Below, in pieces: positions 12,401 to 35,528 of a stretch of 64,000 nt of DNA (its first letter is position 1; the number at the start of each line of letters is the position of its first letter). This DNA comes from Marsupella aquatica (lineage: Eukaryota; Plantae; Marchantiophyta), in contig OZ316898.1 of the NCBI GenBank assembly GCA_973895155.1, positions 11,927,187 to 11,991,186 on the forward strand, written 5' to 3'. The position numbers and the translations under genes were made by a program. Below the pieces are notes generated by a model. The model saw only the letters and a list, made by a program, of their open reading frames with translations, made no database searches and had not been told where the DNA came from.

Positions 12401-14604
12401 ACACCCCACCCACACACACATACTCTCCACACCCCTTATGTGTGGAGGGAGGATTGAACCTGGGACCTCTCGGTTCTAGGCTCATCCTCTGGCCAACTGA
12501 CCAAAGCCAGTTGGTTCTTTCCCTCCCTTTTCAAAACTTAGTTCGGTGGGTCCTTAGCAGTAAAACTTATACATATCTGCATTGATCATCCAGAAGGACA
12601 GAGATTGACCCTTTCCAGTAGCATATTAACCATGAAAACACAAAAGATTGATAGTTTTTGACAATGTTCGTACCTGACATGCCAGCTTGGAGAAGCTTTT
12701 CAATTGTCTCAACATCTCGAGATTGGGGCCCAAGGGTTGCAATTATCTTGCTCACGGATGAAAAGGATTGCTGTGATACAGAGACATAATAATCAGAATT
12801 ATGAAAAAGATCCTTGAAAAACATTGATCCTCCTCATTATTTCCTAGTGAGGCAGTGCAACCAAGTTCAGTATTTTACATGCTTTTATCAATTCTCAACC
12901 TAGGAACAACGGCCGTATTCTTTGAGAATTTGGACTGATAGTCTCACCACAATTGAGCAATCAATCCAATAATTGGGTTTTGCAGTTTAATGATCTTGAT
13001 GGACATGCAAAGGAATGATCTTGATGGAGGATCATGTCAGCATGCTGGTCCAATAAAAAGCTTAACATCACTGTTTCTGCACCCCTTGACCTTATTACTA
13101 ATGAATTCTTGGAATTTACTAAACTTTGAGCCAGGCACCTTATTAAAGTTCTATGTTTCTGTAGAGGACGAACCAATATTACCTCTAATTCTTATAATTT
13201 AGCTCCACAAGAATCATTGAGGCTTGCGCATTACAGGTCGGAATAGGTAGTCAATGAGCTGCACTTTGACCTTAACCAGTGCTGCTTCTTGAGATGAGTG
13301 ATTTCAAGATTCTTTTTCGAAAATCACGATCACTATTTCAGTAGAGAGACTAAAACTGTCATCTATGGCTCCACGTAGATCGAAAGTTCAGTGCTAATAG
13401 CTATAACTTACTTATTCCTGCGAGGAAAGGTCATTTAAGTTTGATTAAAATTGCGTGGTCACTCCCTGTGCAATTGTACAGACGCAATTGTACAGGTACA
13501 TCTTCGCCGCTTCTAACTGTGGAGAGCGCGAACTCAAGAGTGATCCATTCACCATCGAATTCAACATCGTTCTCCTGCACGGGTGTAGGAGAGTACTTCT
13601 GATTCGTGTGTATTTAGCGTGAAGGCTACATAATTTCTAATCATGGATGTTGAATGAACGCTTCCTGAAGTCCTTACACCAACTTGAGGATGAGTTCCCT
13701 TCACAGTAAATGGAATTCATCCAGTGGGACAGCCGGACATTATATACTTCGTGTGCCAGTTTGGCGAAGAATCACTTGGTGGATACTGATACACAATATG
13801 AACTTGACAACAGAGTTCGCAAAAAGATTGGAAAACTGTTAAGGCAGCGAGAAGTGCGCACAAGACTAGTCGAAAGATACGAAATAGGAGGGATGCAAGA
13901 TGACTTGGGAATAGATAAAACTGCTAGGACACCTTGATTTGCAATAGTGGCAAACACCAAGTAATGATTCAACTGAGCAAGAAACTCAAATTCGAACACA
14001 AAAGTCTGATGCATCTAGTCAAAGCGAAGTAGCTCAGATAGGGACAGGCAACGGGAATTGGCTACACGGAAGCCCGTTCGGCTGTGAATTAGACTTTCAC
14101 TGGCTCATCAGACAGAATTGAACAGCAAAATGGCCACTACACTACGAACGTTGTTATCACCCTTTCTTTCGAAATTGATTCACGCAATGAGGAACATTTA
14201 TCCTCGCTCCATCGCACTCGCAGTCATGCTTCATACGTGCCTCGAACTGAATAGCAGTCAGACTGCCCGGCCCGACAAAGAGACATCCTATTCCAATCGA
14301 TCAATTGACTGACTGGAAAGGCCACGGCTAATTAGTCAAAAGCTCACGCCAATTCGACAACGAGGTCAATAATATCGATCAATTGACGGACTGGACAGGC
14401 CATGGTTAATTACTTAATAGCTCCCGCCAATTCGATAACGAGGTTAATTAAATAGATCAATTGACTGCCCGGATAGGCCACGCTTAACTGCTTAATAGCT
14501 CACGCCAAAATCGATAACGAGGTGAATTACGTTACCTCCTTAGATGTCTCTAAAATGGAGGCCAGCTTGACTGGCTCCTGCAGGAGCAATTGCGATCCTG
14601 GCAT
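6483..14604 (-). CDS. PK: Cytosolic pyruvate kinase, multi-exon (about 16 exons)
   Basis: Exon 1 14604-14536 [23 protein letters not shown]; 12770-12674 [14 protein letters not shown]; 12083-11986 VARFDFSWG; 11557-11402 VMFDTAGPE. Later exons carry [49 protein letters not shown] and [12 protein letters not shown]. Last exon 6638-6483 ends ...[11 protein letters not shown]. Splice sites checked were GT-AG. Confidence 0.95.
12180..12514 (-). mobile_element. tRNA-derived SINE in a pyruvate kinase intron
   Basis: 16-bp TSD TTCTTTCCCTCCCTTT at 12164-12179 and 12515-12530. The minus-strand head has Pol III box A (TGGTCAGTTGG) and box B (GGTTCAATCC). A-rich tail (T run at ~12180-12204). Confidence 0.9.
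14297..14525. repeat. 3 x ~77-bp tandem repeat in pyruvate kinase intron 1
   Basis: gatcaattgac...aggcca...agctc(a/c)cgcca...cga(c/t)aacgagg repeated at ~14297, ~14375 and ~14453. Confidence 0.85.
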
Positions 14605-14727: not shown

Positions 14728-15275
14728 AGTGACAAACAGCAATCAATCAGCTGTGCAGGCCCGACTTTTCTCGATATCCCGCCACAGACAGAATTCATGC
14801 ATGCACCTTTTCACGATTCTCCGTAGCTACCTACACTTTGGACAGAATTCTCCACTTCCGAGCGAAGGGACAAACATCAATCAATCGGCTGTGCAGGCCC
14901 GACTTTTCTCCATACCGCACAGACAGGATTCTCCACTTCCGAGCGAAGTGACAACATCAATCAATCAGCTGTGCAGGACCGGCTTTTTCTCGATAATCCG
15001 CCACAGAGAATTCTCTAGCACAGACAGAATTCATACATGCACCTTTTCTCGATTCTCCGTAGCTACCTACACTTCGAACAGAATTCTCCACTTCCGAGCG
15101 AAGGGACAAACATCAATCAATCAGCTGTGCAGGCCCGACTTTTCCCGATACTCCGCCACAGAGAATTCTCCAGCACAGGCAGAATTCATACATGCAGCTT
15201 TTTTCGATTCCCTGTAGCTACCTACAGTTTGAACAGAATTCTCCACTTCCGAGCGAAGGGACAAGCAGTAATCAA
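14728..15275. repeat. Imperfect tandem repeat (~80-155-bp units) in the pyruvate kinase 5'UTR/promoter
   Basis: aatcaatcagctgtgcagg-like motif at ~14741, 14879, 14959 and 15114, with repeated gaattctccacttccgagcgaagggaca blocks. Confidence 0.85.
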
Positions 15276-23075: not shown

Positions 23076-24229
23076 ACATGCTTACAGGGATTTTGGAAGG
23101 AGCTTCCCATGGGGTCTGTAAACAATCATGAATCTTAATGCCTTTGTGATTTTTTCCTTTGTGTTTTTCATGGCATTATAGGAGTCATGATGACCCCTTC
23201 AAGATCTGGATCACTTCCTTAGGAACATTCCCTCTACTTTTACGAGAGTTTGAAAAAAATAAAAATAGTTTAGGCCTTTAAGTGTAGTACCTAAGATCCT
23301 GTTTTTGCAGTATTATGGGCAATAATAGCTCTTCAAACTCGAGGTGAAGCTCTTTTTTGGGCAATATATTTGATAATGCACTCTAAAGAGGACTTTATTC
23401 TATACATATATAAAGTTTGGTTTTACTCTATTGCCAAGTACCACCAGATTATAAATTTATTGCAATTTTGATTTGTCTCATTTTTGTTACTCAAATACAC
23501 GTGCTACTATGAACACTGAACCTCCCCACTGTTGGGGGAGACCAAAGTGGTGGATTTCTAGCATAACTGCCCTCCACCTTACTACTGTACTACACTTAAC
23601 CAGCCCCAGCCTCGGAAAATGGATTGGGCCAGTGGAGTGCCAGACTGCCAGTGGAGTTCCAGCTCAACTGCCTGGTTACCAAAAAAAAGGGTTGGAAAAG
23701 TTTCACCTGCGCAGGTAGGGAAGATTGTAAACTACCTCCGTTTAACTTAGTCCCTCCAACACCATTGACCCAAGACTATTGGTCAATTTGCACTATCCAA
23801 CAACCTTCACTTCTGCCAATAATAATTGAGTCATTCTAATACCGTGGACTGAAGGACATTGGTTGTTCCACACAATATATCAAACAGCAGCTAAGGAATC
23901 CAATTGGGCACAACTCCTCCAATCCAATTGAGTAAGCTGGACCCATGGCATTATTTAACTGTAGAAAATCTTCGGATTGTCTTTCCATTTTAGCGGCAGA
24001 GTTGCAGAAAGCTTGAAAACAGAGGCTTCGTTGTATGATTTGAGTTCTTTCTTGTTGTTCTTGTACGAGATACGCTCTTCTCAAAGAAAATGATTATGAA
24101 GCTACTTCTCGAAGAAAGTGATCATGAAGCTTCCAATCAAGACGGCTGCCACTGCCACTGCCACTGCCAAGCCCGGTTTGACCTTGCCCGTCAAACTGGG
24201 CGTTTGAGAGCGGCAAATTGACAACCCGG

Positions 24230-24803
24230 CACCCGGGTTCGGAAGCAGTCCGGGAAAGGAAACGTCCGGTTCGGGGTTCGGGTTCGGGAGGAGGTTCGGG
24301 TGGGGGTCCGGGTGACTAATCGGGTCCGGGTCCGGGGCGGAGGCGCTCGGTGGGGGCTCGGGGTGGGGTCCGGGTGGGGTTCGGGGTGGGGTCCGGGTGC
24401 GGCTCGGGTCCGGGAGGAGGAGGTACGGGGGGTTCGGGTGGGGGTCCGGGTGGGGTTCGGGTCCGGGTCCGAGGGGTTCGGGTGCGCTCGGTGGGGGTTC
24501 GGGGTGGGGTTCGGGTCCGGGAGGCCGGGGTGGGTCCGGGTGGGGATCGGGGTTCGGGGTCCGGTTCGGGGTTCGGGATTGAGGCTCGGAGAATTAGGGT
24601 TTCGCGATTTAGGGTTGGAGGATGGGGCCGGTCGGGAAAGGGTCGGGGGCTCGGGAGAGGATAAAAGGAGGAGATCCCTCCTCCCCCTCCTCATTTTCGG
24701 TTTTGCAGAAAGGAGGAGAGGAGGAGAGGAGGAGGAGGAGGAGGAGGAGAGGAGGAGAGGAGGAAGAGGAGGAGGAGGAGGAGAAGAGGAGGAGGAGGAG
24801 GAG
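24230..24803 (+). repeat. G-rich subterminal microrepeats (GGGTTCGG/GGGTCCGG) and a GGA tract at the left end of the hAT
   Basis: Dozens of GGG-containing 6-12-bp units, with TTAGGG motifs, then (GGA)n at ~24715-24803. Confidence 0.9.
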
Positions 24804-24890
24804 GTAAGTGTTTGGTTTTGGTTTTTATTTTTGATTTTTGGTTTGTTTTGTGATTTTTTAAGTTTTCTTTGTGTTTTAAACCCTAACCTT

Positions 24891-25255
24891 AGAGCCAAAT
24901 GGAGGGATATAAAGAAACACTTGTACGCGCACGCTTTGAGCCTCGGTTCGGTTTGCGATACTCCGTACAAGAATTTCTTAATATCACCTTAACAATTTAG
25001 TCTCCTTTGTTCATTAAGTAAAACATTTGCGGAGATAGAGGAATCCATGTACGCATGCTTAGAGTTTCGGCTCGGTCTGCGATACTTTGCATGGATACCA
25101 CGATTCGCCGAGAATGTTTTTACTTGAATTACAAATGAGTGTTAAGTTATAGACACCAAATCACATATGTCGAAGCAGGAATATAACAACTTTGAAAGAA
25201 AAGAACACTTTTGTGCGCATGCTTTGAGCGTCCGCTCGGTCTGCGATATTTCACA
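24891..25255. repeat. Left subterminal inverted repeat of the hAT (partner at ~34335-34705)
   Basis: Three copies of gca(t/c)gctt(t/a)gag..tcg(g)ctcggtctgcgata on the left (~24925, 25050, 25215) are mirrored by tatcgcagaccgagcc..gctcaaagcat-like copies at ~34345, 34510 and 34640. Confidence 0.85.
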
Positions 25256-25475
25256 AGTGTTGTCTTTCTCTTTTATTGTTGTTATATAGAAAGGTAATTA
25301 AAATCATGTGTGCAATAAAAATACATAATGCATGGGAGAAACAAACCGGGAAAAGATAATAACAATACGACTTGTAATTTTCAGGTTGGTCGTTGAATCC
25401 TTATTGGAAGGATTTTATTTAAATCCCGATAAGATCTTGTTCCTCCCTCACATATTCCTTTTGTGAAGGGAAAAC

Positions 25476-27077
25476 ATGGTCATCGAAAATTTTAGTTTAG
25501 AGTATAGGCAAGTGTTGGAGATGATCACAAAACATGTGAATGAAGGATATGAGCCGAATCTTGTTGCTCTGGATGCATTGAAGAACGCTCGAAACACTCT
25601 CGAACATGCTAGGAATTCTAGCAAAGTGGCCGGGAAACGAAAACGGAAGGGGGCAAACGAAGAAGCAAAACAGGTTCGACACAATGTGGTAGTGTCGATA
25701 TGGAAAGAGATACTTTATCGCTACACTCAACCGAAACAGTATGGGGTGGACGGGTTCGAGAGGGAGTTCACAAGACACGGAGAGAAAGGATACAAGAACT
25801 TTCTTGGTGAGATAACCCGTTGTATGCGGGAAAGTGTACAAAAGGAGGACAATTTCACACGAGAGCAAATGAAGTCATTTGAAGATGAAACTGAGAAACC
25901 GGGAGGATTTCTGGAAAATTTGGCACTCAACTTGGAGAAGCATGTTTGGGATAATTTGGCAGCCAAAGTGGAAGAGGGTGACACTACATTGCTTGGAAAC
26001 CCCGGGATGTACACACACAAGAGAGAATTGCTAGTGAAGTGGAGTAAGGAGTTGGCAATGGCGAAATCTGATAGCAATGTCAAATATGCTAACGAGATTG
26101 TGCACTTTGGGGATGTCAGCATCAAAAGTGCTCGAAAAGGAACACGTCCATCGCGTGTAGTTCCAGAGGTTAGGAGTATCCATTTTCTTAAACCTGAGCA
26201 AGTGCACAACACACGTCGCATTGGGAAAGGAATCCAAGGAGAGGTATACACTTGTCGTATATTACATTGTTCTCTCATTCCCGTCAACGTGACCTTAGTC
26301 GCAAAGCGGTTCAAGGATGGGGACAAGCATAAGAGATGAACTGACGCATTACAAGAAGTGCTTATGGGAGGACTGAATCATAAGGGAATCGTTGGAGCTC
26401 TTGCGTTGACTATTGAGGATCCGCCAAAACTTATTTACGATCACTATAATGGAGGTGACTTGGGTAGCTTTATTGATAAGTGCGGCATATCGTCAAAGAG
26501 CAAGGGGAAGGCACAGATCACGACGGACCTTGATTTCAAGTTTATTTCGGAGAAGAAACTCTTGTTGGAGAACCGGTTGGGAATCGTCTTGGCTTTGCTG
26601 GAGACACTGCAATACTTGCATGAGCATGATCGATTTCATTGTGATCTTCACTTTGGAAACATCCTTCTTCATTTCGATCACAAGCACGATGTGGCTATTA
26701 AGGTGTATGTTGGTTTATGTGATTTTGGCTTGTCTAAGCATAAATCACAGTGCAAATTACCAGCTAATCGGATGTGGCCCACAGCAACAGAAAAAGCAGC
26801 AACATACCAAAAACAATTTCCACAGTTGGCTCCGGAGCTTGTTCAACCTACCCCTGTCGAGTTTAGTGAAAGTACCGATATATATGCTTTGGGGAATATT
26901 TTTGAGACATTGTTGATAGAGAATTGGGATGGAATGTCTAAGGGTTCACGGTTTTTGGGGAGGGGTTGGAGTGCACAAGTGCATGGCCCCAAATTGGATG
27001 TCATAATCCGTGAAATGATGGCCACGGATGCCAAGAAAAGAATGGATTGTGCTTTTTGGAGTTTGAAGATAGTTTGA
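25476..27077 (+). pseudogene. Transposon-borne protein kinase (TKL-like) with an in-frame TGA at 26337
   Basis: ORFs 25476-26339 and 26358-27077 are in the same frame. Motifs IGKGIQGEVY, VAKRF, HCDLHFGNILL, DFGL, APE and DIYALG. The frame continues upstream through another TGA (25464) to an acceptor at 25384. Confidence 0.88.
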
Positions 27078-27267
27078 ACGTTTCCAGATTGCACATTGTA
27101 TTTGCACAACAGTCCATATCTTAGAGATTAAAGATTAGGGTTTACACAATTTTGTAAAGGTCACCTTAACGATTATATGTTTATTCATTGTATGTCAATT
27201 ACAATGTTCTGCATTTTGTTGATAATATTCTATCAAACTTTGTCGTGAATGCCCAAAATTGTGCTAA

Positions 27268-29277
27268 ATGTGTTTGTACATTGTCAAATATCGCAGACCT
27301 TTTGTACACATCGCAAACATGGGACGATGGGAATTGTCTTCTGATGATGAAGACAAAGAGTTCACGACACAACATCTTACCATGCAAGATGGTCAAGGAT
27401 CCTATTGTGACGATGAAGCTCTTCGTAATAATGTGTTGGATAATCTTACAACCATTGGCATTCACTATGAGGCTAAACCCAAGGTTGATGGAACACCGGC
27501 GCCAAACACAAGAAGATGGGAAGATGAGGGTATGAAGGATGAATGGAGTATATTAACGCCCAATGTAAATCCTCCCCATGACGAATGGGCCATGAATGCA
27601 AAGGAATTGGAGATGTTGATGCCAAAGAAAGACTTTTGGCCATTAGCACAACAAATTTTTCACGATCTGGATCTTTGGGCAACAAGATCATGGGCGCAAG
27701 AAAAATTCACCATGTCCAAAGTAACACATGCAGGTGTTAAATCACATTGGCAGCAACGATATCGAGAGTTTGCTCCACACAAAGCCCAAACGAAAATGAG
27801 TTCCATTTACCCTCCTTTTATCCGATGTCTGATTGCTGAATTCATTCTCAAGTGGAAGGTGGATTACCGTTGGGAAAACAGTGCTGGCAAGCTGACTCAT
27901 CAGGTGCATCCATCAGTGGTTGCGATTGCAACGAATAGGAATACAACTATTACAAAGGACCCTTCAATGGAGACTTCCAACAAGGGATCCAAAAGAAAGC
28001 TAGATGACACTGGGGAGGGATATGCGCATGAGAAGGGGAAAGCGGCTGTACTTCCTCGAGTCTCCATGCCTGACCGTGCAGCACCACCAACCAATGTGGA
28101 GTCAACGCACACCAAAAAACCAATCCTTGTAGGTGTTGGGAGTAGAACTCCACATGCAAAGAACAACAATGTTACTGATGCTAACAAGGATAAGTTCAAC
28201 CTGCACAACATATGCAAGAGCTTGGGGGCAGATGTTGCAGAGGTGATTGAGACAAATCTCCGCACGAAGTATGTAGTGGAGCTATGTGAATGTGGTAGCA
28301 TCGAAAAGTTCAAGTCACAATTGCAACAAGCTGATATAAAGATGAGATCACTTGAGAAGAAGCAGAACGAGCTGACGACCAATTCTGAAGTGATGTTGTA
28401 CAAGTGTCAATTGTTTGACAAGATGGAAGAAATCAATAAGCTGACAAAACAACTTGCTGAAAAAGAGCGTCAATGCAATGAACTGGCACGACTTGAGGAG
28501 AAGGACAAGATCATTAATGATCTTAAAAGTGAACTTGCAATGCAAGCAATCATCATATCAAATCTTCACGAAGAGGTGCAAGAATTTAACAATGGTGCTT
28601 TGGGGATGAGGTCAAACAAAGGGCAAGGTGAATTATCGTCGCCAAATTTTGTTAACATGCAAATCATAGATCCTACAGGGCACAGCAATCTTTTTCCAGA
28701 TGTGGAGGTTGACGCGGAAGGTATTGATAGGTTTTTTTAATAGTGGAAAAAGGATGAAACTATGGCAACATTTGTTCGTGAAAAGGATGACAAGTGTACT
28801 TGGTGCCTATATCCTTGGGGCCCTCAATCTGTTTCCATGTTGGGAACCTGCGGTCATATATGGCATCATGCTTGCTTGTCTAAATGGTTGAAGAAAAGCC
28901 AAAAATGTTGGTGTCGCACACCATTTCATGAACGCGAGTATGAGCAACGAGGATTGTTGAAGCAAATGCCATCAATGGAGACTCAACAAAACACTGAAGA
29001 TATGACTGAAGATATGACTGAAGATACTATACCGGCGATGCAAATAGATGAAACTCCCATTGAACATTTCACAATCAATGAATATAATTTGTCAGATGGG
29101 GAATTTGACAGGTTGTTATTCAGTGGTCGACTCGATGAGTGGAAACAATATGCGGCAGCCAACCAGCCATCAATAGATGAGCAAAATTTGCAACGATCCA
29201 TTCGGCGCCATCGACGATGTCAACAACAGGCAGAGGTGAAAACAGAAGCTGTTGACAATAACAACAAAAGGAACTAA
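27268..29277 (+). pseudogene. Transposon-borne coiled-coil + RING-finger protein (putative E3 ligase), interrupted by in-frame TAA-TAG at 28738-28743
   Basis: ORFs 27268-28740 and 28762-29277 are in the same frame. Heptad-rich segment KSQLQQADIKMRSLEKKQNEL..., then CTWC...TCGHIWHHACLSKWL...CWCR (RING-H2-like). Confidence 0.75.
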
Positions 29278-29782
29278 AACCAATAGTCTCTACATTTTGA
29301 TGTTATTTTCATGTAGTTACTATTAGAGACATTTTGTTAAAATAGAAGCGGCATATCCTCTTTGACAATTATTTTCAACTTGTAATTGGTAAAGAGATTT
29401 TGGAGTGACATTACATTGCATATCTCGTTGAGTACATATATTTTTCATTGGGGGCATGGCGTCGCCTTTTGGAGAATGTGTATTTTCGTAAGAATATTCC
29501 ATCCTACAATCAGCCATAGGTTTTGGAGGCATATTGTCGGGCTCACAATCATATTTTTGGACAAGTATGAGGAAAATAGACGTGATGAGAGATGGTAGCA
29601 CAGTGGACTCAGGTACTGATCCTTCTCTGAAATCATTTCCAAAAGGAGATCGTGTAGCACAATGAGTTCAACAAAGTCAACATCGCAATGGTTTTAGCCG
29701 CCCAAGTTGAGAATGATTTTGTAGAAGGATGTATACCTAAGTCCACTCACTTTTCCTGTCTTTCATAATTTTTTCCGCTATT

Positions 29783-31110
29783 GCTGCTACGGCCAATGAC
29801 ATTCATGCACATGCGAACCGAGGCCAACGCCTACTCCTTTGCCCACCGCAAAAATGGGCCCTCATTACAACTTGAAGTTGAACGGAGTTTATTTGAGTAC
29901 GAGAGAAGTTCTGAAAGCAAATGCACTCTCAGGTCAAATTTTCAGGTCCTTCGAGCAAAAAATTACTGAGTATGTCATCGATCCGTTGGTTTCACAACTT
30001 CTCTCGTACTCAAATAAACTCTGTTCAACTTCAAGTAGCGTAGCTGCTATGACCAATGACATTCATGCGCATGCAAACCGAGGCCAACGCCTCTACATTT
30101 GCCTACCCCAAAAATGGGCCCTGATTAGAACTTGAAGTTGAACAGAGTTTTTTTCATTATGAGAAGGTTTATTCAAGCAATGGCACTCTCAGGTCAATAT
30201 TTCAGGTCCTCCTGACTTTGTTATTATTGAATATGTCCGTGCTCCGTTGCTTGAATAAATCTTCTGATAATGAAATGAACTGACCAATTACTGGAGTACG
30301 GCTGCTACGGCCTATGACATTAATTCGCACAATTGCATGTTTATATCCTCTCCTTTCCGAATTCCAATTCGAGCTTGGACATCCTCTCGTCAGCTGGTCT
30401 CCACCATTGCAGTTGCTCTTCACGCAAACCAAGATAGCAGTCTCTAGAATCCTCGAACCTATTTTATTTCAATGCATCATTCATAGTGTTTGAGGAATCC
30501 AGAGGTTCGCGTGAGGAGCAACTGAAAGGGTGGAGACCTGCTGACGAGAGGGTGTCCAAACTCGAATTGGAATTCGGACAGGAGAGGATATAAACGGGTG
30601 AACTTTGACTTGAAATTGGTGACTGTATTTTGCGTCTGCATATCAATTTGGTGATTGATCTTGCGGAATCCCCGTGACCGTGTCTGATCATCATCATGAC
30701 ATTGCTCTCCTTGGCCACCAATGGGCCCTCATTACAACTTCAAGTTGAACGGGGTTTATATGATTATGAGAAGGTTACTGATTATGTAGGCGATGTGTTC
30801 ATTTCACAACTTCTCTCATAGTCATATAAACTCTGCCCAACTTCAAGTAGTGCAGCTGCTACGGTCAACGACATTCACCCACCCCAAAAATGGGCCCTCA
30901 TTACAACTTCAAGTTCAACTAAGTTTATTTTATTACGAGAAGGTTTATTCAAGCAATGACATTCTCAGGTCCAATAATGAGGTCCTCTCGACCTCATTAT
31001 TATTGAATATGACGGTGCTCTATTGCTGGACTAAATCTTCGCATAGTGAAATGAACTAACCAATTAATGGAGGGGGCTGGTATGGACTACAGCTGCTATG
31101 GCCAACAACA
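29783..31110. repeat. Array of ~260-bp units, each with a long fold-back hairpin (putative ncRNA/small-RNA precursors)
   Basis: Leader GCTGCTA(C/T)G(G/A)CCAATGACATT-like at 29783, 30043, 30301, 30855 and 31092. Hairpins at 29870-30036, 30152-30275, 30339-30595, 30737-30848, and a degenerate one at ~30930-31050. Confidence 0.85.
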
Positions 31111-31344
31111 AGGTACTTTGAAATAGTCAGTGTTGGAGATTTGGAAAACATGTTGCGTTGGTGTGTCTCTATGACATTCTCAAATGCAAATACAAATAAA
31201 TTATTCAATCATTGTACAATAATAAACACACTGCAAGATAATACAATCATGTTACAAAAAATATAATTGTTTATAATTTTGTCTATGTCAGATACGACAA
31301 TATAAGAGTAGCAACACTTGATATTATCCTAATGAAAAGATGCT

Positions 31345-34250
31345 TCAAGGCTGTGAAGAGAAATTTCGTGCATTGTTGTTAAGATTTTTGCACAAAAGCG
31401 CATTCCACTCGTCTTGTTTGTCGCCCCAACTGAGTGGATCACGATTGTGTGACTGAACATTGTGCGATGTTTCTTGAAATGATGATATTCCTCGAAACCC
31501 ACCAAGGCCAATAGGCCTGTTCGACGTATATGGATTCATGACACTTGGCCCTGCATACGCATTCAAGGGTGGACCTGCATGGTGTTGCCAGTTTGCATGT
31601 GGGTCGTTTGAAGTTTGACCTTCATGATTGTTGTATCCATGAAAAAAGGTTGATGTCCTTCCATTCATCGGATGCCCTGCTGTGCCTATGCGTTGCTCGT
31701 TGAAATATGGTCTGCTTGTGTCAACATCATTCGCAAAGTTCGACCAAGGTGACCTTGGTTGGGAAGGCATCACAAAGTTTCTGTCCAGTGATGCATCTTC
31801 CTCGTCTTGGATTTGCGATTCATCAATTGTAGGATACATCTCCAAATCCATTTCATTCTCCCATTCCTCTGCAGCAATGATGTCTGTATCTGGTGGAATA
31901 CGAGTCAAGAACTCACTATCCTTATCCAATGAAAATCCGTGTAGCAATTCATCAGCATCATCAATTGTATCATAATCTTCGACATCTTTTTCACCAAGAG
32001 CCGCACGTGTTGCATCGTACTCTTCATTGGTGCACAACTCCATGGAGATAGGTCTAGGTCCATCATTTGTTCTTCTTCTTTGGTCATAACGTTCATATAT
32101 AAACGTATGCGGGTTTTGAACATTTGTGAGCCCTTTCTCTACCCTCATGTTTGTAAATACAAACACCAAATCTTTTGCTCGATCATTTGTCAATCGATTG
32201 CGACTTTTGGAATGTATAAATCCATACGAACTCCAGTTTCGCTCGCAAGCTGATGCACACACTTTTTGGTGTAAGATTCTTCGCGCCAGGATTCTCAAAT
32301 GTTTATAATCTGCACCATACGCATGCCACCACTCTGCTGGACTGACATTACCTATACTTGATTGGGCGGCTCCCATCGCTATTGATGTGTTGGGATTTTT
32401 TTTTTGGGCGTCAATGGCTTGACTGTGGATGGCAGAAATAAGTTCTCTGACGTCGCGATCACGGTTGATCCCCTCCTTCACCTGTTGTTCTGAATATCTA
32501 GCAATGTATTCACTGAAACCCCTATAGAGTTCTGGATCTCCAGCGACATCTATGTCCTCATCAAAAAACATTTGGGGATTGAGATATGCTGCCACTAGCA
32601 TGAAATCAGTGGTAAGAGATTTTTTCGATCCAAATACACTTTTAGTATCTTTGGTTTCAATACCTCTGTTACCAATGGACAATCCTCCATGCTTGCTTTC
32701 AAAACATCAATCCCTCTTTTCAAACTCCAATACAACCAACCTGATTGCGGAGAATCACCATCAAATTCTCGCAACATCTTGACCAACGGAGTAAAGAATT
32801 TAACTGTATCCTTCACTTCAACCCAAAATGTATCTTGCTGTATCCACATTTTAAGTTCGTCTGCCTTTCCCCTCGTCATGTGTCCAGCTGATTTTGGTCG
32901 CAATGGAAGTCTATCACGATAAGACTGCCAATTATCATCAATGACCATCTGTTGTAAAGCTCCTCTTAGCTCCAACGCTCTTTGTGCCATTAGGAAATTA
33001 GTCGCAAATCTAGTTGCATTTGGATTCAATAGTTTTTTGTCAGGAGATTTTCTTGCAAATATTGCAGAAAGCTTTTGCGATGATGAAACTGCTTTTACTA
33101 TCCACCTCAACCGCTTAAAAATCTTTTAGAATGGATTCTGTCCAGCATCATCTAGCACTACACGCTTGTGACCACACATATCCTCTAGCAGCAAATTAAA
33201 CACGTGGGCAGCACACCAGCTCCAAGTGACATGAGGATACTTTTTCATGACTACCTCACAACCTGCTACGCGACTTGCGGGTGCTCCATCAGTTACAATT
33301 TGAATAATATGATCTGCACCAATATCCTCAATGTATTTCAACCACATGTTGCCAAGATATTTCCCATCTTTCTTGTCAGCTTGCGTAGCATTCCAACTAT
33401 CCAAGAAGAAGTCACCTTTAGAAGTCAACAACATGACATTCATCAAAGGTTCTCTTCGGACGTTTTCCCATCCATCTGAAGAAAGAGAATACCCATAAGG
33501 TTTTGCCTCCTTTAAAGTTTGCGTCATGTCCTTTGTGAGATCCTCCTTACTGTCTTCCAATAATTTCAATCGCAAACTTCGCATCGTAGGTAGAGAATAA
33601 CCATTGACAATCCCTTTTGAAGTCTCTATGACTGCTTCTCGAAAAAAAGGATTATTTGAAATATTGAATGGAATACCACTGGTGTAGAAAGCTTTCGCCC
33701 AAAGCTTATCCAAATTTGTTCTATTTGGAATTTGATAGGCATCCATAATTGGGTTAGGAAGATTTACTGGCCTATCTCCTTCCCTTACATGTGTATCATC
33801 CATGTCAACATAGTTTGACCCTCGTGTGGATGCTTGCGAATATGAACTTCCAACGCTTGGCCTACGACCTCTCACATCCCGCAAGATATGACTTCCATCT
33901 CGTCGTTTGTACTTTAAGGTCGGTGGAACCTTTATCACATTGTACATAATGTTGATGGCATCCAAATCGACGACACCATAGAGTTGCATGCAAGGGGGCG
34001 CATCCCCTTTTTGGATGTTTCCCATCAAATGCGCCTTTGCTCGTGTTGCATGATGAGTAACGTATGTTAAACAATACTTGCATCTTCGATAGATACGATT
34101 GATATCATGACATGTTGAAGGCGCATCACATCGTTCAAAATATCTCCACACTGGAGATTGTTTTGAAGGGTGTTCTTGCACACGAGTTGGACCAGGTCTG
34201 GGAGTAGTGGAATGATATCCAGTTTCATGCGAATCCTCTTCATCGGACAT
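31345..34250 (-). pseudogene. hAT transposase (BED finger, DUF659-type core, C-terminal dimerization domain) with one nonsense codon and one frameshift
   Basis: ATG at 34250. Motifs VWRYF..CKYC..RAKAHL, SSDGW, IIQIVTDGA, WCAAHVFNLLLED, NATRFATNF, AAYLNP and EWW..YG..LARRIL..SACERNWS. In-frame TAA at 33126 and a frameshift in the A run near 32620. Confidence 0.93.
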
Positions 34251-34824
34251 TGTTACGACTCTCAATGGTAAAAAAATAAAAGGGTTGATTCTTTTGATTT
34301 TGTGAATATAACAAATATAGTACAATGGGTTACTTTCCTGAATTATCGCAGATTGGGCCTAAGCTCAAAGCATACGCAGGAAAGTTTCCCAAATTCTTAT
34401 ATTTGTCAACATCCCTACTTCAACCTATGTTATGTAATATCTATAACTTCACAATAGTTTATCTTTGAAGTGAACATATGTACGAGAAATCGTGATACCC
34501 ATATGAAATGTCATAGACCGAGCCAAAGCTCTAAGCATATGCACATGGGTATCTCTTTACTCGCAAGTAGTTCACTTTCAAACAAAACAATGATGCAAAG
34601 TTGTTAAGGCGATATAAGGAACTTCTCGTATGAATTATCGCAGACCGAGCCGAGCTCAAAGCATGCGCGTACAAGAGTTCCAATGTATCCCTCCGATCTC
34701 TCCCTAATGCTAAACCACAAGAGAGAGAAACACAATGAGACTTTGGATTAGTGAAATGAATTAGTTATTCCTACTTATACTAAATCATCTACTTCTTATC
34801 CTCTCTTAAAACTCTTAATCTTTG

Positions 34825-35405
34825 ATCCTAACCCTAATTGCGCCTCCCTTAACCCTAATCTCGCTCCCCTAACCCTAATCCCGCCCCTAACTCTTCCCCG
34901 GCCGCCAATTCCCGAGCCCCGTCCCCGAACCCCGCACCCCGTTCCCCGAACCCCGTTCCCCGCATCCCCGCATCCCCGAACCCCCTACCCGAACCCCCTT
35001 CCCCGAACCCCCTACCTCGTTCCCCGAACCCCGTTCCCCGAATCCCCGAATCCCGGCCCCCCTTTCCCGCCCCCCCTTCCCCGGTTCCCCGAATCCTCTT
35101 CCCCGAATGCCCCCCGTCCCCGGTTCCCCGAATCCCGTCCCCCGGGCCCCCTTTACCCCGGCCGGCCCCGGAAGGGTCCGGGGAGGGTTCGGGTGGGGGT
35201 CCGGGGAGGGTCCGGGAAAGGCCCGAGAGTCCGGGGAATGTTCGGGGGAGGGTCCGGCGAGGTTCCGGGAAAGGCCAGGGAGGGTCCGGGGAGGGTCCGG
35301 GAAGGGCCCGGGAGTCCGGGTTCGGGTCAGGGGGAGTTCGGGTTCAGGTCCGGGGTGCTCGGGAGGTGTTCGCGAAAGGTCCGGGGAAGTCGGGGTTCGT
35401 TCGGG
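34825..35405. repeat. Right hAT terminal region: AACCCTAA motifs, a C-rich CCCCGAA block, then a G-rich GGTCCGGG block
   Basis: Direct inspection; broadly mirrors the left end. Confidence 0.85.
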
Positions 35406-35528
35406 AGAATCTTCAGAAATATACGTCAAATTGCGTGTTTTCGGGTCGTCATTTGACGATTTGACGTGCCCGACAAGGCGTCAAGGTGCCCGTCAGATTA
35501 AACCGGGCTGCCAAGGTCTCGATCTCTG

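What the first reader, a model, noticed from the sequence alone, without database searches (positions are those of the whole stretch)
29783..31110. Polycistronic array of diversified, miRNA-precursor-like hairpins inside the transposon
Seen: a conserved leader recurs at ~260-bp spacing (29783, 30043, 30301, 30855, 31092), interspersed with long fold-backs. These are 51-bp arms with 3 mismatches (29870-30036), 32-bp arms with 3 mismatches, two of them G-U on the + strand (30152-30275), 92-bp arms (30339-30595), ~40-bp arms (30737-30848) and a decayed fifth. Related hairpins differ in both arms together (atttgagtacgag/ctcgtactcaaat versus atatgattatgag/ctcatagtcatat), so pairing is kept while sequence changes. 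Inference: a TE-encoded small-RNA cassette with a constant scaffold and variable stems, potentially targeting host silencing genes or acting as an antidote/regulator of the cargo.
Basis: partly seen in the sequence, partly recalled or inferred. Interest (0 to 1): 0.85.

Follow-up and report, generated by a model that had tools for sequence, protein, structure and literature searches.

The report
Hairpin RNA array inside liverwort transposon
A jumping gene (hAT transposon) of a liverwort carries a tandem row of long RNA-type hairpins between its two tail-to-tail genes; a related liverwort has unrelated hairpins in the same place, and base pairing looks selected, but no RNA data show what they do.

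Summary
Five copies of a leader motif and five long fold-backs lie at 29783-31110, and pairing is kept through two-sided changes (9 pairs against 3.7 in shuffles).

The array fills the spacer between the convergent 3' ends of the two genes of an intact 11.3-kb hAT transposon: the transposase and a kinase/coiled-coil/RING gene.

Eight copies of a related hAT family in Calypogeia fissa have the same gene layout. Seven of them carry 2-13 long hairpins in the same spacer, with no sequence similarity to the window's array. Hairpins are about 30 times denser in the spacers than outside.

In both species the stems tolerate G-U wobble mainly on the strand that reads in the kinase/RING sense. In C. fissa old mismatches run 33:11 and copy-specific ones 19:17. 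This points to selection on RNA structure rather than on a particular sequence.

That fits a transcribed hairpin-RNA module better than a conserved microRNA with a fixed host target. No Rfam family, no MITE-type target-site duplications and no match to the element's own genes were found, and no RNA or small-RNA data could be obtained.

I call it a new variant of transposon-borne hairpin-RNA loci. The function (Dicer substrate, barrier or sink between convergent genes) is inferred. Other copies in this genome were noted earlier in the scan.

The parts
24173..35507 (.). Host element: autonomous hAT transposon, 11,335 bp. Terminal inverted repeats start with CCCGGTTT; G-rich subterminal repeats; 8-bp target-site duplication CTGCCAAG at 24165-24172 and 35508-35515.
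   Evidence: Sequence read; subterminal inverted repeats; DUF659 and Dimer_Tnp_hAT domains.
25476..29277 (+). Accessory gene: kinase (ORFs 25476-26339 and 26358-27077), coiled coil (27268-28740) and RING-H2 (28762-29277, stop TAA at 29275-29277).
   Evidence: Pfam Pkinase and zf-RING_2. 47-89% amino-acid identity to the same ORF series in eight C. fissa copies.
31345..34325 (-). Transposase gene pieces: DUF659 (33126-34325), a middle piece (32595-33110) and the hAT dimerisation domain (31345-32682). Convergent with the accessory gene.
29602..29747 (.). Weak extra hairpin upstream of the array (36-nt arms, 81% Watson-Crick). It folds better on the - strand.
29783..30042 (+). Unit 1: leader 29783-29852, conserved pre-stem block from 29853, and type-A hairpin H1 with arms 29870-29920 / 29986-30036.
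   Evidence: z = -12.5.
30043..30300 (+). Unit 2: leader plus type-B hairpin H2, arms 30146-30183 / 30244-30281. The outer stem is lost on the 3' side.
   Evidence: z = -6.6.
30301..30854 (+). Unit 3: leader start 30301-30338; a 372-nt replacement (30339-30710) that holds palindrome H3 (arms 30339-30430 / 30504-30595); then type-A hairpin H4 (arms 30734-30771 / 30814-30851, loop shortened).
   Evidence: H3 has no strand preference. Read depth over 30211-30504 is up to about 5 times that of the rest of the array.
30855..31091 (+). Unit 4: leader with a 33-nt deletion plus the decayed type-B hairpin H5 (about 30903-31075).
31092..31110 (+). Truncated fifth leader; the array ends here.
31111..31344 (.). 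AT-rich hairpin-free stretch between the array and the transposase stop, with AATAAA-like motifs readable on both strands. Probable 3' end region.
   Evidence: Sequence read. That it is a 3' end region is inference only.

Best explanation
The segment is a tandem array of four and a bit units of about 260 nt. Each unit is a conserved leader followed by a long imperfect hairpin. The array fills the spacer between the convergent 3' ends of the two genes of an autonomous hAT transposon, the transposase and a kinase/coiled-coil/RING gene.

Such arrays are a feature of this hAT lineage. The related family in Calypogeia fissa keeps the same gene layout and carries up to 13 hairpins of unrelated sequence in the same spacer.

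Shown:
- The anatomy of the array.
- Its enrichment in the spacer.
- Compensatory changes that keep the stems paired.
- A wobble (G-U) bias on the strand that reads in the kinase/RING sense, which is the window's + strand.

Inferred: the array is transcribed as a downstream extension or read-through of the kinase/RING transcript, and what is selected is RNA double-strandedness, not a particular sequence.

Most likely role, still inference: a row of Dicer/RNase III-type substrates that ends or absorbs transcription running from the accessory gene towards the antisense of the transposase gene. Double-stranded RNA and siRNAs would then be confined to the spacer, not the coding regions. Small RNAs made from it would be hairpin-siRNA-like, not a conserved microRNA.
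For: - Anatomy and significance.
- Host element and convergent genes.
- Same layout in 8 C. fissa copies and one metagenome contig.
- Hairpins with arms of at least 25 nt: 50 in 27.5 kb of spacers against 11 in 184 kb outside. In the window, 5 of 5 lie in the 2.1-kb spacer.
- No sequence similarity between the two species' arrays, so it is the position that recurs, not the sequence.
- H1 and H2 differ at 33% of stem sites, yet 8 of their 9 two-sided changes keep the pair.
- Wobble pairs persist in diverged paralogues: G-U at columns 55/148 in 3 of 4 window units, and U-G in 6 of 6 members of a C. fissa family. Arm-to-arm homogenisation would be expected to remove them.
- Strand bias in C. fissa: mismatches shared by most copies are A.C: G.T = 33:11 on the transposase strand (p = 0.0013). 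Copy-specific, post-insertion mismatches are 19:17.
- Folding: 11 of 13 L005 hairpins fold better as kinase-sense RNA (p = 0.01). The bias follows the gene orientation in the flipped locus L010.
- In the window, G-U: A.C on the + strand is 14:5, and all four family hairpins fold better on + by 2-15 kcal/mol.
- Unpaired parts show no G+T skew (G+T 0.49-0.50), so a standing mutational strand bias is not evident.
- In related copies of the source organism, the majority base at 30270 is G, which makes a U-G pair on +.
Against: - There are no RNA or small-RNA data. No run on record as RNA holds the stretch, and the four runs that do are contigs of unknown library type.
- The window's own strand bias is not significant alone (14:5, p = 0.06; 9:5 when counted as independent events). 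The strong statistics come from a non-homologous array in another species.
- C. fissa copies share hairpins by descent and some families are paralogues, so the counts are not fully independent (28:11, p = 0.009, after dropping one paralogue).
- The arrays are dispensable for the layout. Copy L007 lost its array by deletion, and contig L008 has a 486-nt spacer with no structure (z = -0.14).
- H4 and H5 pair about as poorly as neutral decay predicts.
- H3 and the 29602-29747 hairpin do not share the strand preference.
- C. fissa spacers contain scraps of other parts of the element, as repair filler would.
- A transcription-linked mutation bias in the active lineage could mimic the wobble bias.
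- The barrier/sink role is untested.
Confidence: 0.45

Rival explanations
1. Neutral DNA-level filler. The spacer is the one place in the element where insertions, inverted duplications and tandem duplications are tolerated. Palindromes would arise from hAT-associated repair (abortive gap repair, template switching, alternative transposition). The arms would co-vary because palindromes are re-formed or homogenised at the DNA level, and any transcription would be incidental.
For: - Hairpin number varies from 0 to 13 among copies, and order is reshuffled.
- Deletion end points lie in palindromes.
- The spacers hold scraps of the element's coding exon, its 5' region and its terminal region.
- L007 and L008 do without hairpins.
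- H4 and H5 look like they are decaying.
- Other transposon families in the same genome are also noted to carry palindrome arrays (unchecked notes).
- Ac/Ds alternative transposition is reported to create inverted duplications (bioRxiv 10.1101/2020.01.07.897926, abstract seen).
Against: - The strand-specific wobble excess appears only in old, shared mismatches (33:11), not in post-insertion ones (19:17).
- Wobble pairs are conserved across paralogues that differ by 18-35%. DNA homogenisation should erase them.
- H1 and H2 stay 94% and 87% complementary although they differ at 33% of stem sites.
- The 30-fold local enrichment recurs in two genera with unrelated sequences.
Confidence: 0.25
2. 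Self-regulatory hairpin-siRNA source. The hairpins are diced into siRNAs that act on the element itself, as copy-number-dependent damping of the kinase/RING gene or of the whole family (Mu killer-like logic, but built into the element).
For: - In C. fissa, one spacer hairpin has an arm copied from the coiled-coil exon of the kinase/RING gene (44 nt, 84-88% identity; 2 mismatches in the first 31 nt in L003).
- That arm is antisense in the kinase-sense RNA, and the hairpin folds far better on that strand (-65 against -50 kcal/mol).
- The RNA-level signals are as in the best explanation.
Against: - The window's array has no detectable complementarity to any other part of its element or of the 64-kb window.
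- Only one of about 13 C. fissa hairpin families shows it.
Confidence: 0.15
3. One reading: a true polycistronic microRNA cluster with a constant scaffold, whose mature products target host genes such as silencing factors, in the way miR820 of rice CACTA elements targets OsDRM2.
For: - Hairpins of precursor-like size lie in a row behind a conserved leader, and the 5' arm is more conserved than the 3' arm.
- The preferred strand is +, the same direction as the leader-then-hairpin order.
- The precedent of miR820 (PMC3459959).
Against: - No stem sequence is conserved between the window's array and the C. fissa arrays, although a target in a conserved host gene should hold the mature sequence.
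- The most conserved 5' stretch is unpaired in the type-B hairpins.
- Near-perfect stems of 35-92 bp are atypical for DCL1-type precursors (established knowledge).
- There is no match at Rfam's gathering score; the best is 81.6 bits against a threshold of 230.
- No expression data exist.
Confidence: 0.08
4. Each hairpin is an independent MITE that landed in the spacer.
For: - The arms look like long terminal inverted repeats.
- Read depth over 30211-30504 (the right end of H2, leader 3 and the left arm and loop of H3) is up to about 5 times that of the rest of the array, so these segments occur in more copies.
Against: - No target-site duplication flanks H1, H4 or H3 (sequence).
- The four family hairpins share a non-palindromic leader and a 260-nt period, and form a 2 x 2 higher-order repeat. 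They therefore spread by tandem duplication.
- No copy lies outside the spacer in 62 kb of window or 184 kb of flanks.
Confidence: 0.04

Closest known systems
miR820 family inside rice CACTA transposons (Nosaka et al. 2012, PMC3459959)
   Same: A hairpin RNA gene carried inside a DNA transposon and proposed to act in the conflict between element and host silencing.
   Different: miR820 is a single precursor with a defined mature sequence that co-evolves with its target site in OsDRM2. Here there is a tandem array of long, near-perfect hairpins. No sequence is conserved between related elements, no target is known, and no small RNA has been shown.
Mu killer and other inverted duplications of transposon sequence that give hairpin RNA (PMC3440606); Ac/Ds silencing started by inverted duplications (bioRxiv 10.1101/2020.01.07.897926)
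   Same: Long inverted repeats of transposon-linked sequence, transcribed by read-through from a neighbouring gene and used as an siRNA source. One C. fissa hairpin is an inverted duplication of the element's own coding exon.
   Different: Mu killer is a rearranged derivative at one locus that silences the family. Here the hairpins are part of the autonomous element itself, they travel with it, and in the window they do not match its genes.
MITE-derived and inverted-duplication-derived young plant MIRNA / hairpin-siRNA loci (for example PMC4091103; bioRxiv 10.1101/2024.07.25.605110)
   Same: Long, nearly perfect fold-backs of repeat origin, the usual raw material of young small-RNA genes.
   Different: These hairpins have no target-site duplications, no dispersed solo copies in the sequence at hand and a shared non-palindromic leader. 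They are tandem units at a fixed position between two convergent transposon genes.
Repetitive extragenic palindromes between convergent bacterial genes (bioRxiv 10.64898/2026.03.23.713779, abstract only)
   Same: Arrays of structure-conserved, sequence-labile palindromes at the 3' ends of convergent genes, acting as RNA 3'-end elements. This is an analogy of logic only.
   Different: Those are bacterial, short (about 35 nt) and unrelated in origin and machinery.

Membership tests
hAT superfamily transposon (host element) | Short terminal inverted repeats and an 8-bp target-site duplication | tested here: met
   The CCCGGTTT... ends are inverted at 24173 and 35507. CTGCCAAG flanks both sides.
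hAT superfamily transposon (host element) | Transposase with the hAT C-terminal dimerisation domain | tested here: met
   PF05699 at E = 6e-11 and DUF659 at E = 1.5e-30.
Canonical plant MIRNA precursor | Single-stranded fold-back with an extended stem | tested here: met
   (z = -12.5 and -6.6).
Canonical plant MIRNA precursor | Precise excision of one 20-22-nt miRNA/miRNA* duplex with 2-nt overhangs, seen in small-RNA reads | not testable with these tools
   No run on record as RNA or small RNA was offered. The runs laid were contigs of unknown library type.
Canonical plant MIRNA precursor | Homology to a described MIR family | tested here: not met
   No hit at gathering score. The best permissive hit is MIR7533 at 81.6 bits against a threshold of 230, on both strands of the 92-nt-arm palindrome.
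Transposon-encoded miRNA of the miR820 type | Mature sequence conserved among related elements and complementary to a host gene | tested here: not met
   There is no similarity between the window's array and the arrays of the related C. fissa family. Host targets could not be searched because the source genome is not at hand.
Long hairpin-RNA (inverted-repeat siRNA) locus | Long, near-perfect inverted repeat with a short loop | tested here: met
   Arms of 35-92 nt, 82-94% complementary, with loops of 42-73 nt.
Long hairpin-RNA (inverted-repeat siRNA) locus | Both arms transcribed on one RNA strand | tested here: inconclusive
   Only indirect evidence: the wobble bias and the better folding on the kinase-sense strand. 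No transcript data.
Long hairpin-RNA (inverted-repeat siRNA) locus | Production of siRNAs from the stem | not testable with these tools
   No small-RNA data.
MITE | Target-site duplication directly flanking the inverted repeats | tested here: not met
   The flanks of H1 (..CATTACA / AGCGTAG..), H4 (..CATTACA / AGTGCAG..) and H3 (..TTGCAT / GGGTGAA..) show none.
MITE | Dispersed copies at unrelated sites | tested here: inconclusive
   None in the 64-kb window. Read depth suggests that the stretch 30211-30504, which includes part of H3, occurs in more copies than the rest of the array.

The most novel reading that the evidence does not exclude
A lineage of liverwort hAT transposons carries, as a selected part of the element, a fast-evolving multi-hairpin RNA module between its convergent transposase and kinase/RING genes. 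The module works through its double-strandedness alone, as a Dicer/RNase III barrier, sink or decoy that keeps the host's RNA silencing away from the element's coding regions. It would be a structural counter-silencing device encoded by a transposon.
Probability: 0.25. Interest if true: 0.8.

Novelty: new variant of a known kind. Interest (0 to 1): 0.6.

Why it matters
Transposons that carry their own small-RNA genes are very few; miR820 in rice CACTA elements is the textbook case. Little is known of how autonomous DNA transposons with convergent genes avoid making double-stranded RNA against themselves.

Here a hairpin array recurs at the same place in related elements of two liverwort genera. 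The sequences are unrelated, but pairing is kept and the wobble bias is strand-specific. If the array is transcribed, it gives a tractable case of selection on RNA structure alone inside a mobile element.

It also gives a concrete test, in bryophytes, of whether transposons use structured RNA to manage host silencing. If the array is not transcribed, it documents a strong local bias for palindrome formation in hAT elements.

Tried and rejected
- Rfam at gathering score over the whole window: nothing. The permissive mode gave only sub-threshold matches to long-hairpin MIR models, on both strands of the same palindromes. I read these as structure-only matches.
- Sequencing runs: the search returned four holders of unknown kind, none on record as RNA. 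Laying them showed near-identical contigs, diverged low-depth variants and joints that skip or reorder units. This says nothing on expression.
- Similarity between the window's array and the C. fissa loci: none.
- Complementarity of the array to the rest of the window or to the element's own genes: none beyond chance.
- Coding origin of the 92-nt arms: four of six frames are open over 30 codons, so this is uninformative.
- My first BLAST-based hairpin finder missed palindromes with short loops. I replaced it with an anti-diagonal extension finder.
- Exact look-up of the window's RING ORF in public assemblies: not on record.
- The motif AATGGGCCCT is absent from all fetched loci.
- Literature searches for a described hAT with a kinase/RING gene or with hairpin arrays in liverworts found nothing relevant.
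- MITE reading rejected: no target-site duplications, and the units are tandem with a shared leader.
- A standing mutational strand bias is not supported by the composition of the unpaired parts, but it is not excluded for the active lineage.
Full report
**1. The observation**

The leader GCTGCTACGGCCAATGACA occurs five times (at most 3 mismatches) at 29783, 30043, 30301, 30855 and 31092. It occurs nowhere else in the window, and 0 of 100 shuffles reach five matches. A second block, AATGGGCCCTCATTACAACTT, occurs four times, again only here.

The repeat finder returns these inverted repeats:
- 29870-29920 / 29986-30036: 51 nt, 94% complementary.
- 30146-30183 / 30244-30281: 38 nt, 87%.
- 30339-30430 / 30504-30595: 92 nt, 91%.
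- 30734-30771 / 30814-30851: 38 nt, 82%.

A decayed fifth hairpin at about 30903-31075 is the homologue of the second (202-nt direct repeat at 82%). Hairpins 1 and 2 fold with z-scores of -12.5 and -6.6 against dinucleotide shuffles.

**2. Context**

The array lies in an intact hAT transposon at 24173-35507. The ends, CCCGGTTT..., are inverted, and the 8-bp duplication CTGCCAAG flanks both sides.

On the + strand the element has a series of ORFs for a protein kinase, a coiled coil and a RING-H2 finger, ending with a stop at 29275-29277. On the - strand it has the transposase (DUF659 and the hAT dimerisation domain), ending at 31345.

The array therefore sits in the 2.1-kb spacer between two convergent 3' ends. 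About 500 nt of hairpin-free sequence lie between the RING stop and the first leader, with one weak hairpin at 29602-29747. About 235-270 nt lie between the array and the transposase stop.

**3. Anatomy of the array**

The four related hairpins align over their whole length (alignment A1). They fall into two types. H1 and H4 are type A, with a full stem. H2 and H5 are type B, whose outer stem is lost on the 3' side.

The order is A-B-A-B, and the two halves are about 82% identical. The array is thus a 2 x 2 higher-order tandem repeat.

In unit 3, about 35 nt of leader are replaced by 372 nt that hold the unrelated 92-nt-arm palindrome H3.

Conservation is uneven across a unit:
- Pre-stem block: 94% mean pairwise identity.
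- Left outer arm: 84%.
- Left inner arm: 76%.
- Loop: 73%.
- Right inner arm: 68%.
- Right outer arm: 60%.

The best-kept stretch is unpaired in the type-B hairpins, so it is not kept for pairing.

**4. Co-variation**

On A1, 9 of 54 pairs have changes on both sides. Shuffles give 3.7 +/- 1.3 (0 of 500 reach 9), and slid partner columns give 1-3.

H1 and H2 differ at 33% of stem sites, yet 8 of their 9 two-sided differences keep the pair. H1 and H4 differ at 17%, with 3 of 3 kept.

The distal copies pair less well. H4 has 76% Watson-Crick pairs over its 38 comparable positions (82% over the arms), and H5 about 71%. This is close to what neutral decay would give.

**5. Relatives**

The transposase's closest database relatives are unnamed proteins of the leafy liverwort Calypogeia fissa. 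Identity is 58-64% for the C-terminal piece and 74% for DUF659. The window therefore comes from a liverwort.

I fetched eight C. fissa copies (L001-L007 and L010) and one metagenome contig (L008). All have the same layout: transposase, spacer, then the RING/coiled-coil/kinase gene in convergent orientation. Amino-acid identity to the window's accessory ORFs is 47-89%. The accessory gene is thus an old part of this hAT lineage.

The spacers are 1.06-6.0 kb in C. fissa and 486 nt in L008. With a finder for arms of at least 25 nt and loops of at most 300 nt, the hairpin counts are:

| Locus | Hairpins in spacer |
|---|---|
| window | 5 |
| L001 | 9 |
| L002 | 4 |
| L003 | 8 |
| L004 | 9 |
| L005 | 13 |
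| L006 | 2 |
| L007 | 0 |
| L010 | 11 |

 L008 has none.

For the window and L001-L007 this is 50 hairpins in 27.5 kb of spacer against 11 in 184 kb outside, about 30-fold. In the window, all five hairpins of the 64 kb are in the spacer.

The C. fissa arrays have no sequence similarity to the window's array. Among themselves the C. fissa copies are 93-99% identical in shared segments and differ by large deletions, duplications and reshuffling. L007 lost everything between two palindromes.

Reads from the source organism tell the same story. There are near-identical contigs, low-depth diverged variants, and joints that skip about 1.4 kb of the array or reorder units. Notes from other windows of this genome list further copies of 9.85, 9.86 and 7.2 kb, one of them described with hairpin arrays. 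I did not check these notes.

**6. Which strand, and RNA or DNA?**

A transition in a Watson-Crick pair gives either G.T, which is a wobble pair on the strand read, or A.C, which is a wobble pair on the other strand. Without selection and without a strand-biased mutation process the two should be equal.

In C. fissa I split stem mismatches into two classes: those present in most copies, and so fixed in the active lineage, and those private to one copy, and so arising after insertion.
- Shared mismatches: A.C : G.T = 33:11 on the transposase strand (p = 0.0013; 28:11, p = 0.009, after dropping one paralogous hairpin).
- Private mismatches: 19:17.

The old mismatches are therefore mostly wobble pairs in RNA read in the kinase/RING sense. 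The neutral input is symmetric.

Folding each hairpin on both strands gives the same answer. On the kinase-sense strand, 11 of 13 (L005, Wilcoxon p = 0.01), 8 of 9 (L001), 7 of 8 (L003) and 4 of 4 (L002) are more stable. In L010, which was fetched in the opposite orientation, the bias flips with the genes: G.T: A.C = 36:15, and 9 of 11 are more stable.

In the window the same direction is seen. G.T: A.C on the + strand is 14:5, and H1, H2, H4 and H5 fold better on + by 2.2, 10.1, 6.7 and 15.4 kcal/mol. The numbers are too small to stand alone (p = 0.06). H3 has no preference, and the 29602-29747 hairpin prefers the other strand.

The unpaired parts of the arrays show no G+T skew (0.49-0.50), so a standing mutational strand bias is not evident.

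Wobble pairs are also kept across diverged paralogues:
- Columns 55/148 are G-U in three of four window units.
- One U-G pair is kept in six of six members of a C. fissa hairpin family that shows six compensatory pairs.

Arm-to-arm gene conversion would be expected to resolve such pairs. I take these results as moderate evidence that the stems are maintained as RNA on the kinase/RING-sense strand, which is the window's + strand.

**7. What it is not**

- *Not a known RNA family.* There is no Rfam hit at gathering score. The permissive matches are to long-hairpin MIR models at a third of their thresholds, on both strands.
- *Not a set of MITEs.* No target-site duplication flanks H1, H3 or H4. 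The family hairpins share a non-palindromic leader and a tandem period. No copy lies outside a spacer in the sequence at hand. Read depth over 30211-30504, which includes part of H3, is up to about five times that of its neighbours, so these segments may have further copies.
- *Not aimed at its own element in the window.* No complementarity beyond chance was found.
- *In C. fissa, one hairpin does have an arm copied from the coiled-coil exon of the kinase/RING gene.* The match is 44 nt at 84-88% identity, over the codons for EEKN.IINNLRQEL. In kinase-sense RNA this arm is antisense to the mRNA, and the hairpin folds at -65 against -50 kcal/mol on the two strands.
- *The C. fissa spacers also hold scraps of the element's 5' region and terminal region*. 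The raw material of these arrays thus looks like repair filler.

**8. Expression**

The one search for sequencing runs found four holders of unknown kind and none on record as RNA. They are contigs and cannot show an RNA.

Every statement about transcription is therefore inference from the sequence statistics above.

**9. Explanation**

*Shown:* a tandem hairpin array at a fixed position between convergent transposon genes; recurrence of such arrays with unrelated sequences in a related family of another genus; compensatory maintenance of stems; and a strand-specific wobble bias.

*Inferred:* the array is transcribed as a downstream extension or read-through of the kinase/RING transcript, and its double-strandedness is what matters. 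Several observations fit a structure-dependent, sequence-independent role and speak against a conserved microRNA with a fixed host target:
- No stem sequence is conserved between the two species.
- One array holds many unrelated hairpin families.
- Hairpin number varies from 0 to 13.
- The best-conserved stretch is unpaired in half of the units.

My preferred reading is a row of Dicer/RNase III-type substrates that ends or absorbs transcription running towards the antisense of the transposase gene, so that double-stranded RNA is confined to the spacer. I give the whole chain 0.45: about 0.9 for the anatomy, about 0.65 for RNA-level selection, and about 0.3 for the barrier/sink role.

The rivals are:
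- Neutral palindromic filler with DNA-level co-variation: 0.25.
- A self-regulatory hairpin-siRNA source: 0.15.
- A true polycistronic microRNA cluster with host targets: 0.08.
- Independent MITEs: 0.04.

**10. Comparison and novelty**

The closest known cases are:
- miR820 inside rice CACTA elements (PMC3459959).
- Mu killer-type inverted duplications (PMC3440606).
- Inverted duplications from Ac/Ds alternative transposition (bioRxiv 10.1101/2020.01.07.897926).
- MITE-derived young MIRNA loci (PMC4091103).

None of these is a tandem, diversified hairpin array carried by the autonomous element itself at a fixed place between its convergent genes. My literature searches found no description of this hAT lineage or of its arrays. 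I rate it a new variant of a known kind.

It would be worth a small-RNA and long-read RNA experiment. Without that, the function remains open.

Noticed in passing
L003:15769-15860; also L005 about 15030-15121, L001 about 12800-12897, L004 about 14790-14875: One C. fissa spacer hairpin has an arm copied from the coiled-coil exon of the element's own kinase/RING gene (44 nt, 84-88% identity; 2 mismatches in the first 31 nt in L003). In kinase-sense RNA the arm is antisense to the mRNA. The hairpin folds at -65 against -50 kcal/mol on the two strands.
   Followed up: partly
window 24173-35507 and L001-L008, L010: The kinase/coiled-coil/RING gene, convergent with the transposase, is conserved (47-89% amino-acid identity per ORF) in all eight C. 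fissa copies, and its RING gene, the part the contig holds, in a metagenome contig. It is therefore an old accessory gene of this hAT lineage, not a recent capture.
   Followed up: partly
L001:12058-12094 (loop of the 133-nt-arm palindrome) against L005:8449-8485, L003:8027-8063, L004:8813-8849, L007:8533-8569: The loop of the first big palindrome carries a 37-38-nt copy (87-92% identity) of a stretch about 1.3 kb upstream of the DUF659 exon, in the 5' part of the element.
   Followed up: no
L003:12493-12764 and L006:13019-13135: Two C. fissa spacers hold a 110-290-nt segment (67-82% identity) that matches sequence 1.5-2 kb beyond the start of the kinase gene in L002, L003, L006 and L007. It may be a nested or rearranged piece of an element end.
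   Followed up: no
L007:13254-13263 compared with L005:13254-18040: Copy L007 lacks the whole array. The deletion end points fall inside the first and the last palindrome of the L005 arrangement.
   Followed up: partly
window 28741-29034: In the laid contigs, the RING-finger region has roughly 2 to 70 times the summed depth of the array, depending on the run (for example 7961 against about 430 in run X1). RING-like sequence therefore occurs in many more copies in the source organism.
   Followed up: no
window 30211-30504: The summed contig depth is up to about 5 times that of neighbouring array segments. Most related copies carry G at 30238 and G at 30270, and the latter makes a U-G pair on the + strand.
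   Followed up: partly
window 29303-29336 and 29369-29402: A 34-nt direct repeat (74% identity) lies in the presumed 3' untranslated region just after the RING stop codon.
   Followed up: no
window unit junctions, for example 30038-30052 and 30851-30864: The unit junctions carry GCTGCTA. The junctions into units 4 and 5 hold the CAGCTG core, and the junction into unit 2 forms the short palindrome GTAGCTGCTA. GGGCCC sits in the conserved pre-stem block. These could be protein-binding sites but were not tested.
   Followed up: no
same genome, other windows (notes s1-755510 and s1-753274): Earlier notes report palindrome arrays in other transposon families of this liverwort (a Sola-type element and a transposase intron). 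Palindrome arrays may therefore be a general trait of its transposons.
   Followed up: no
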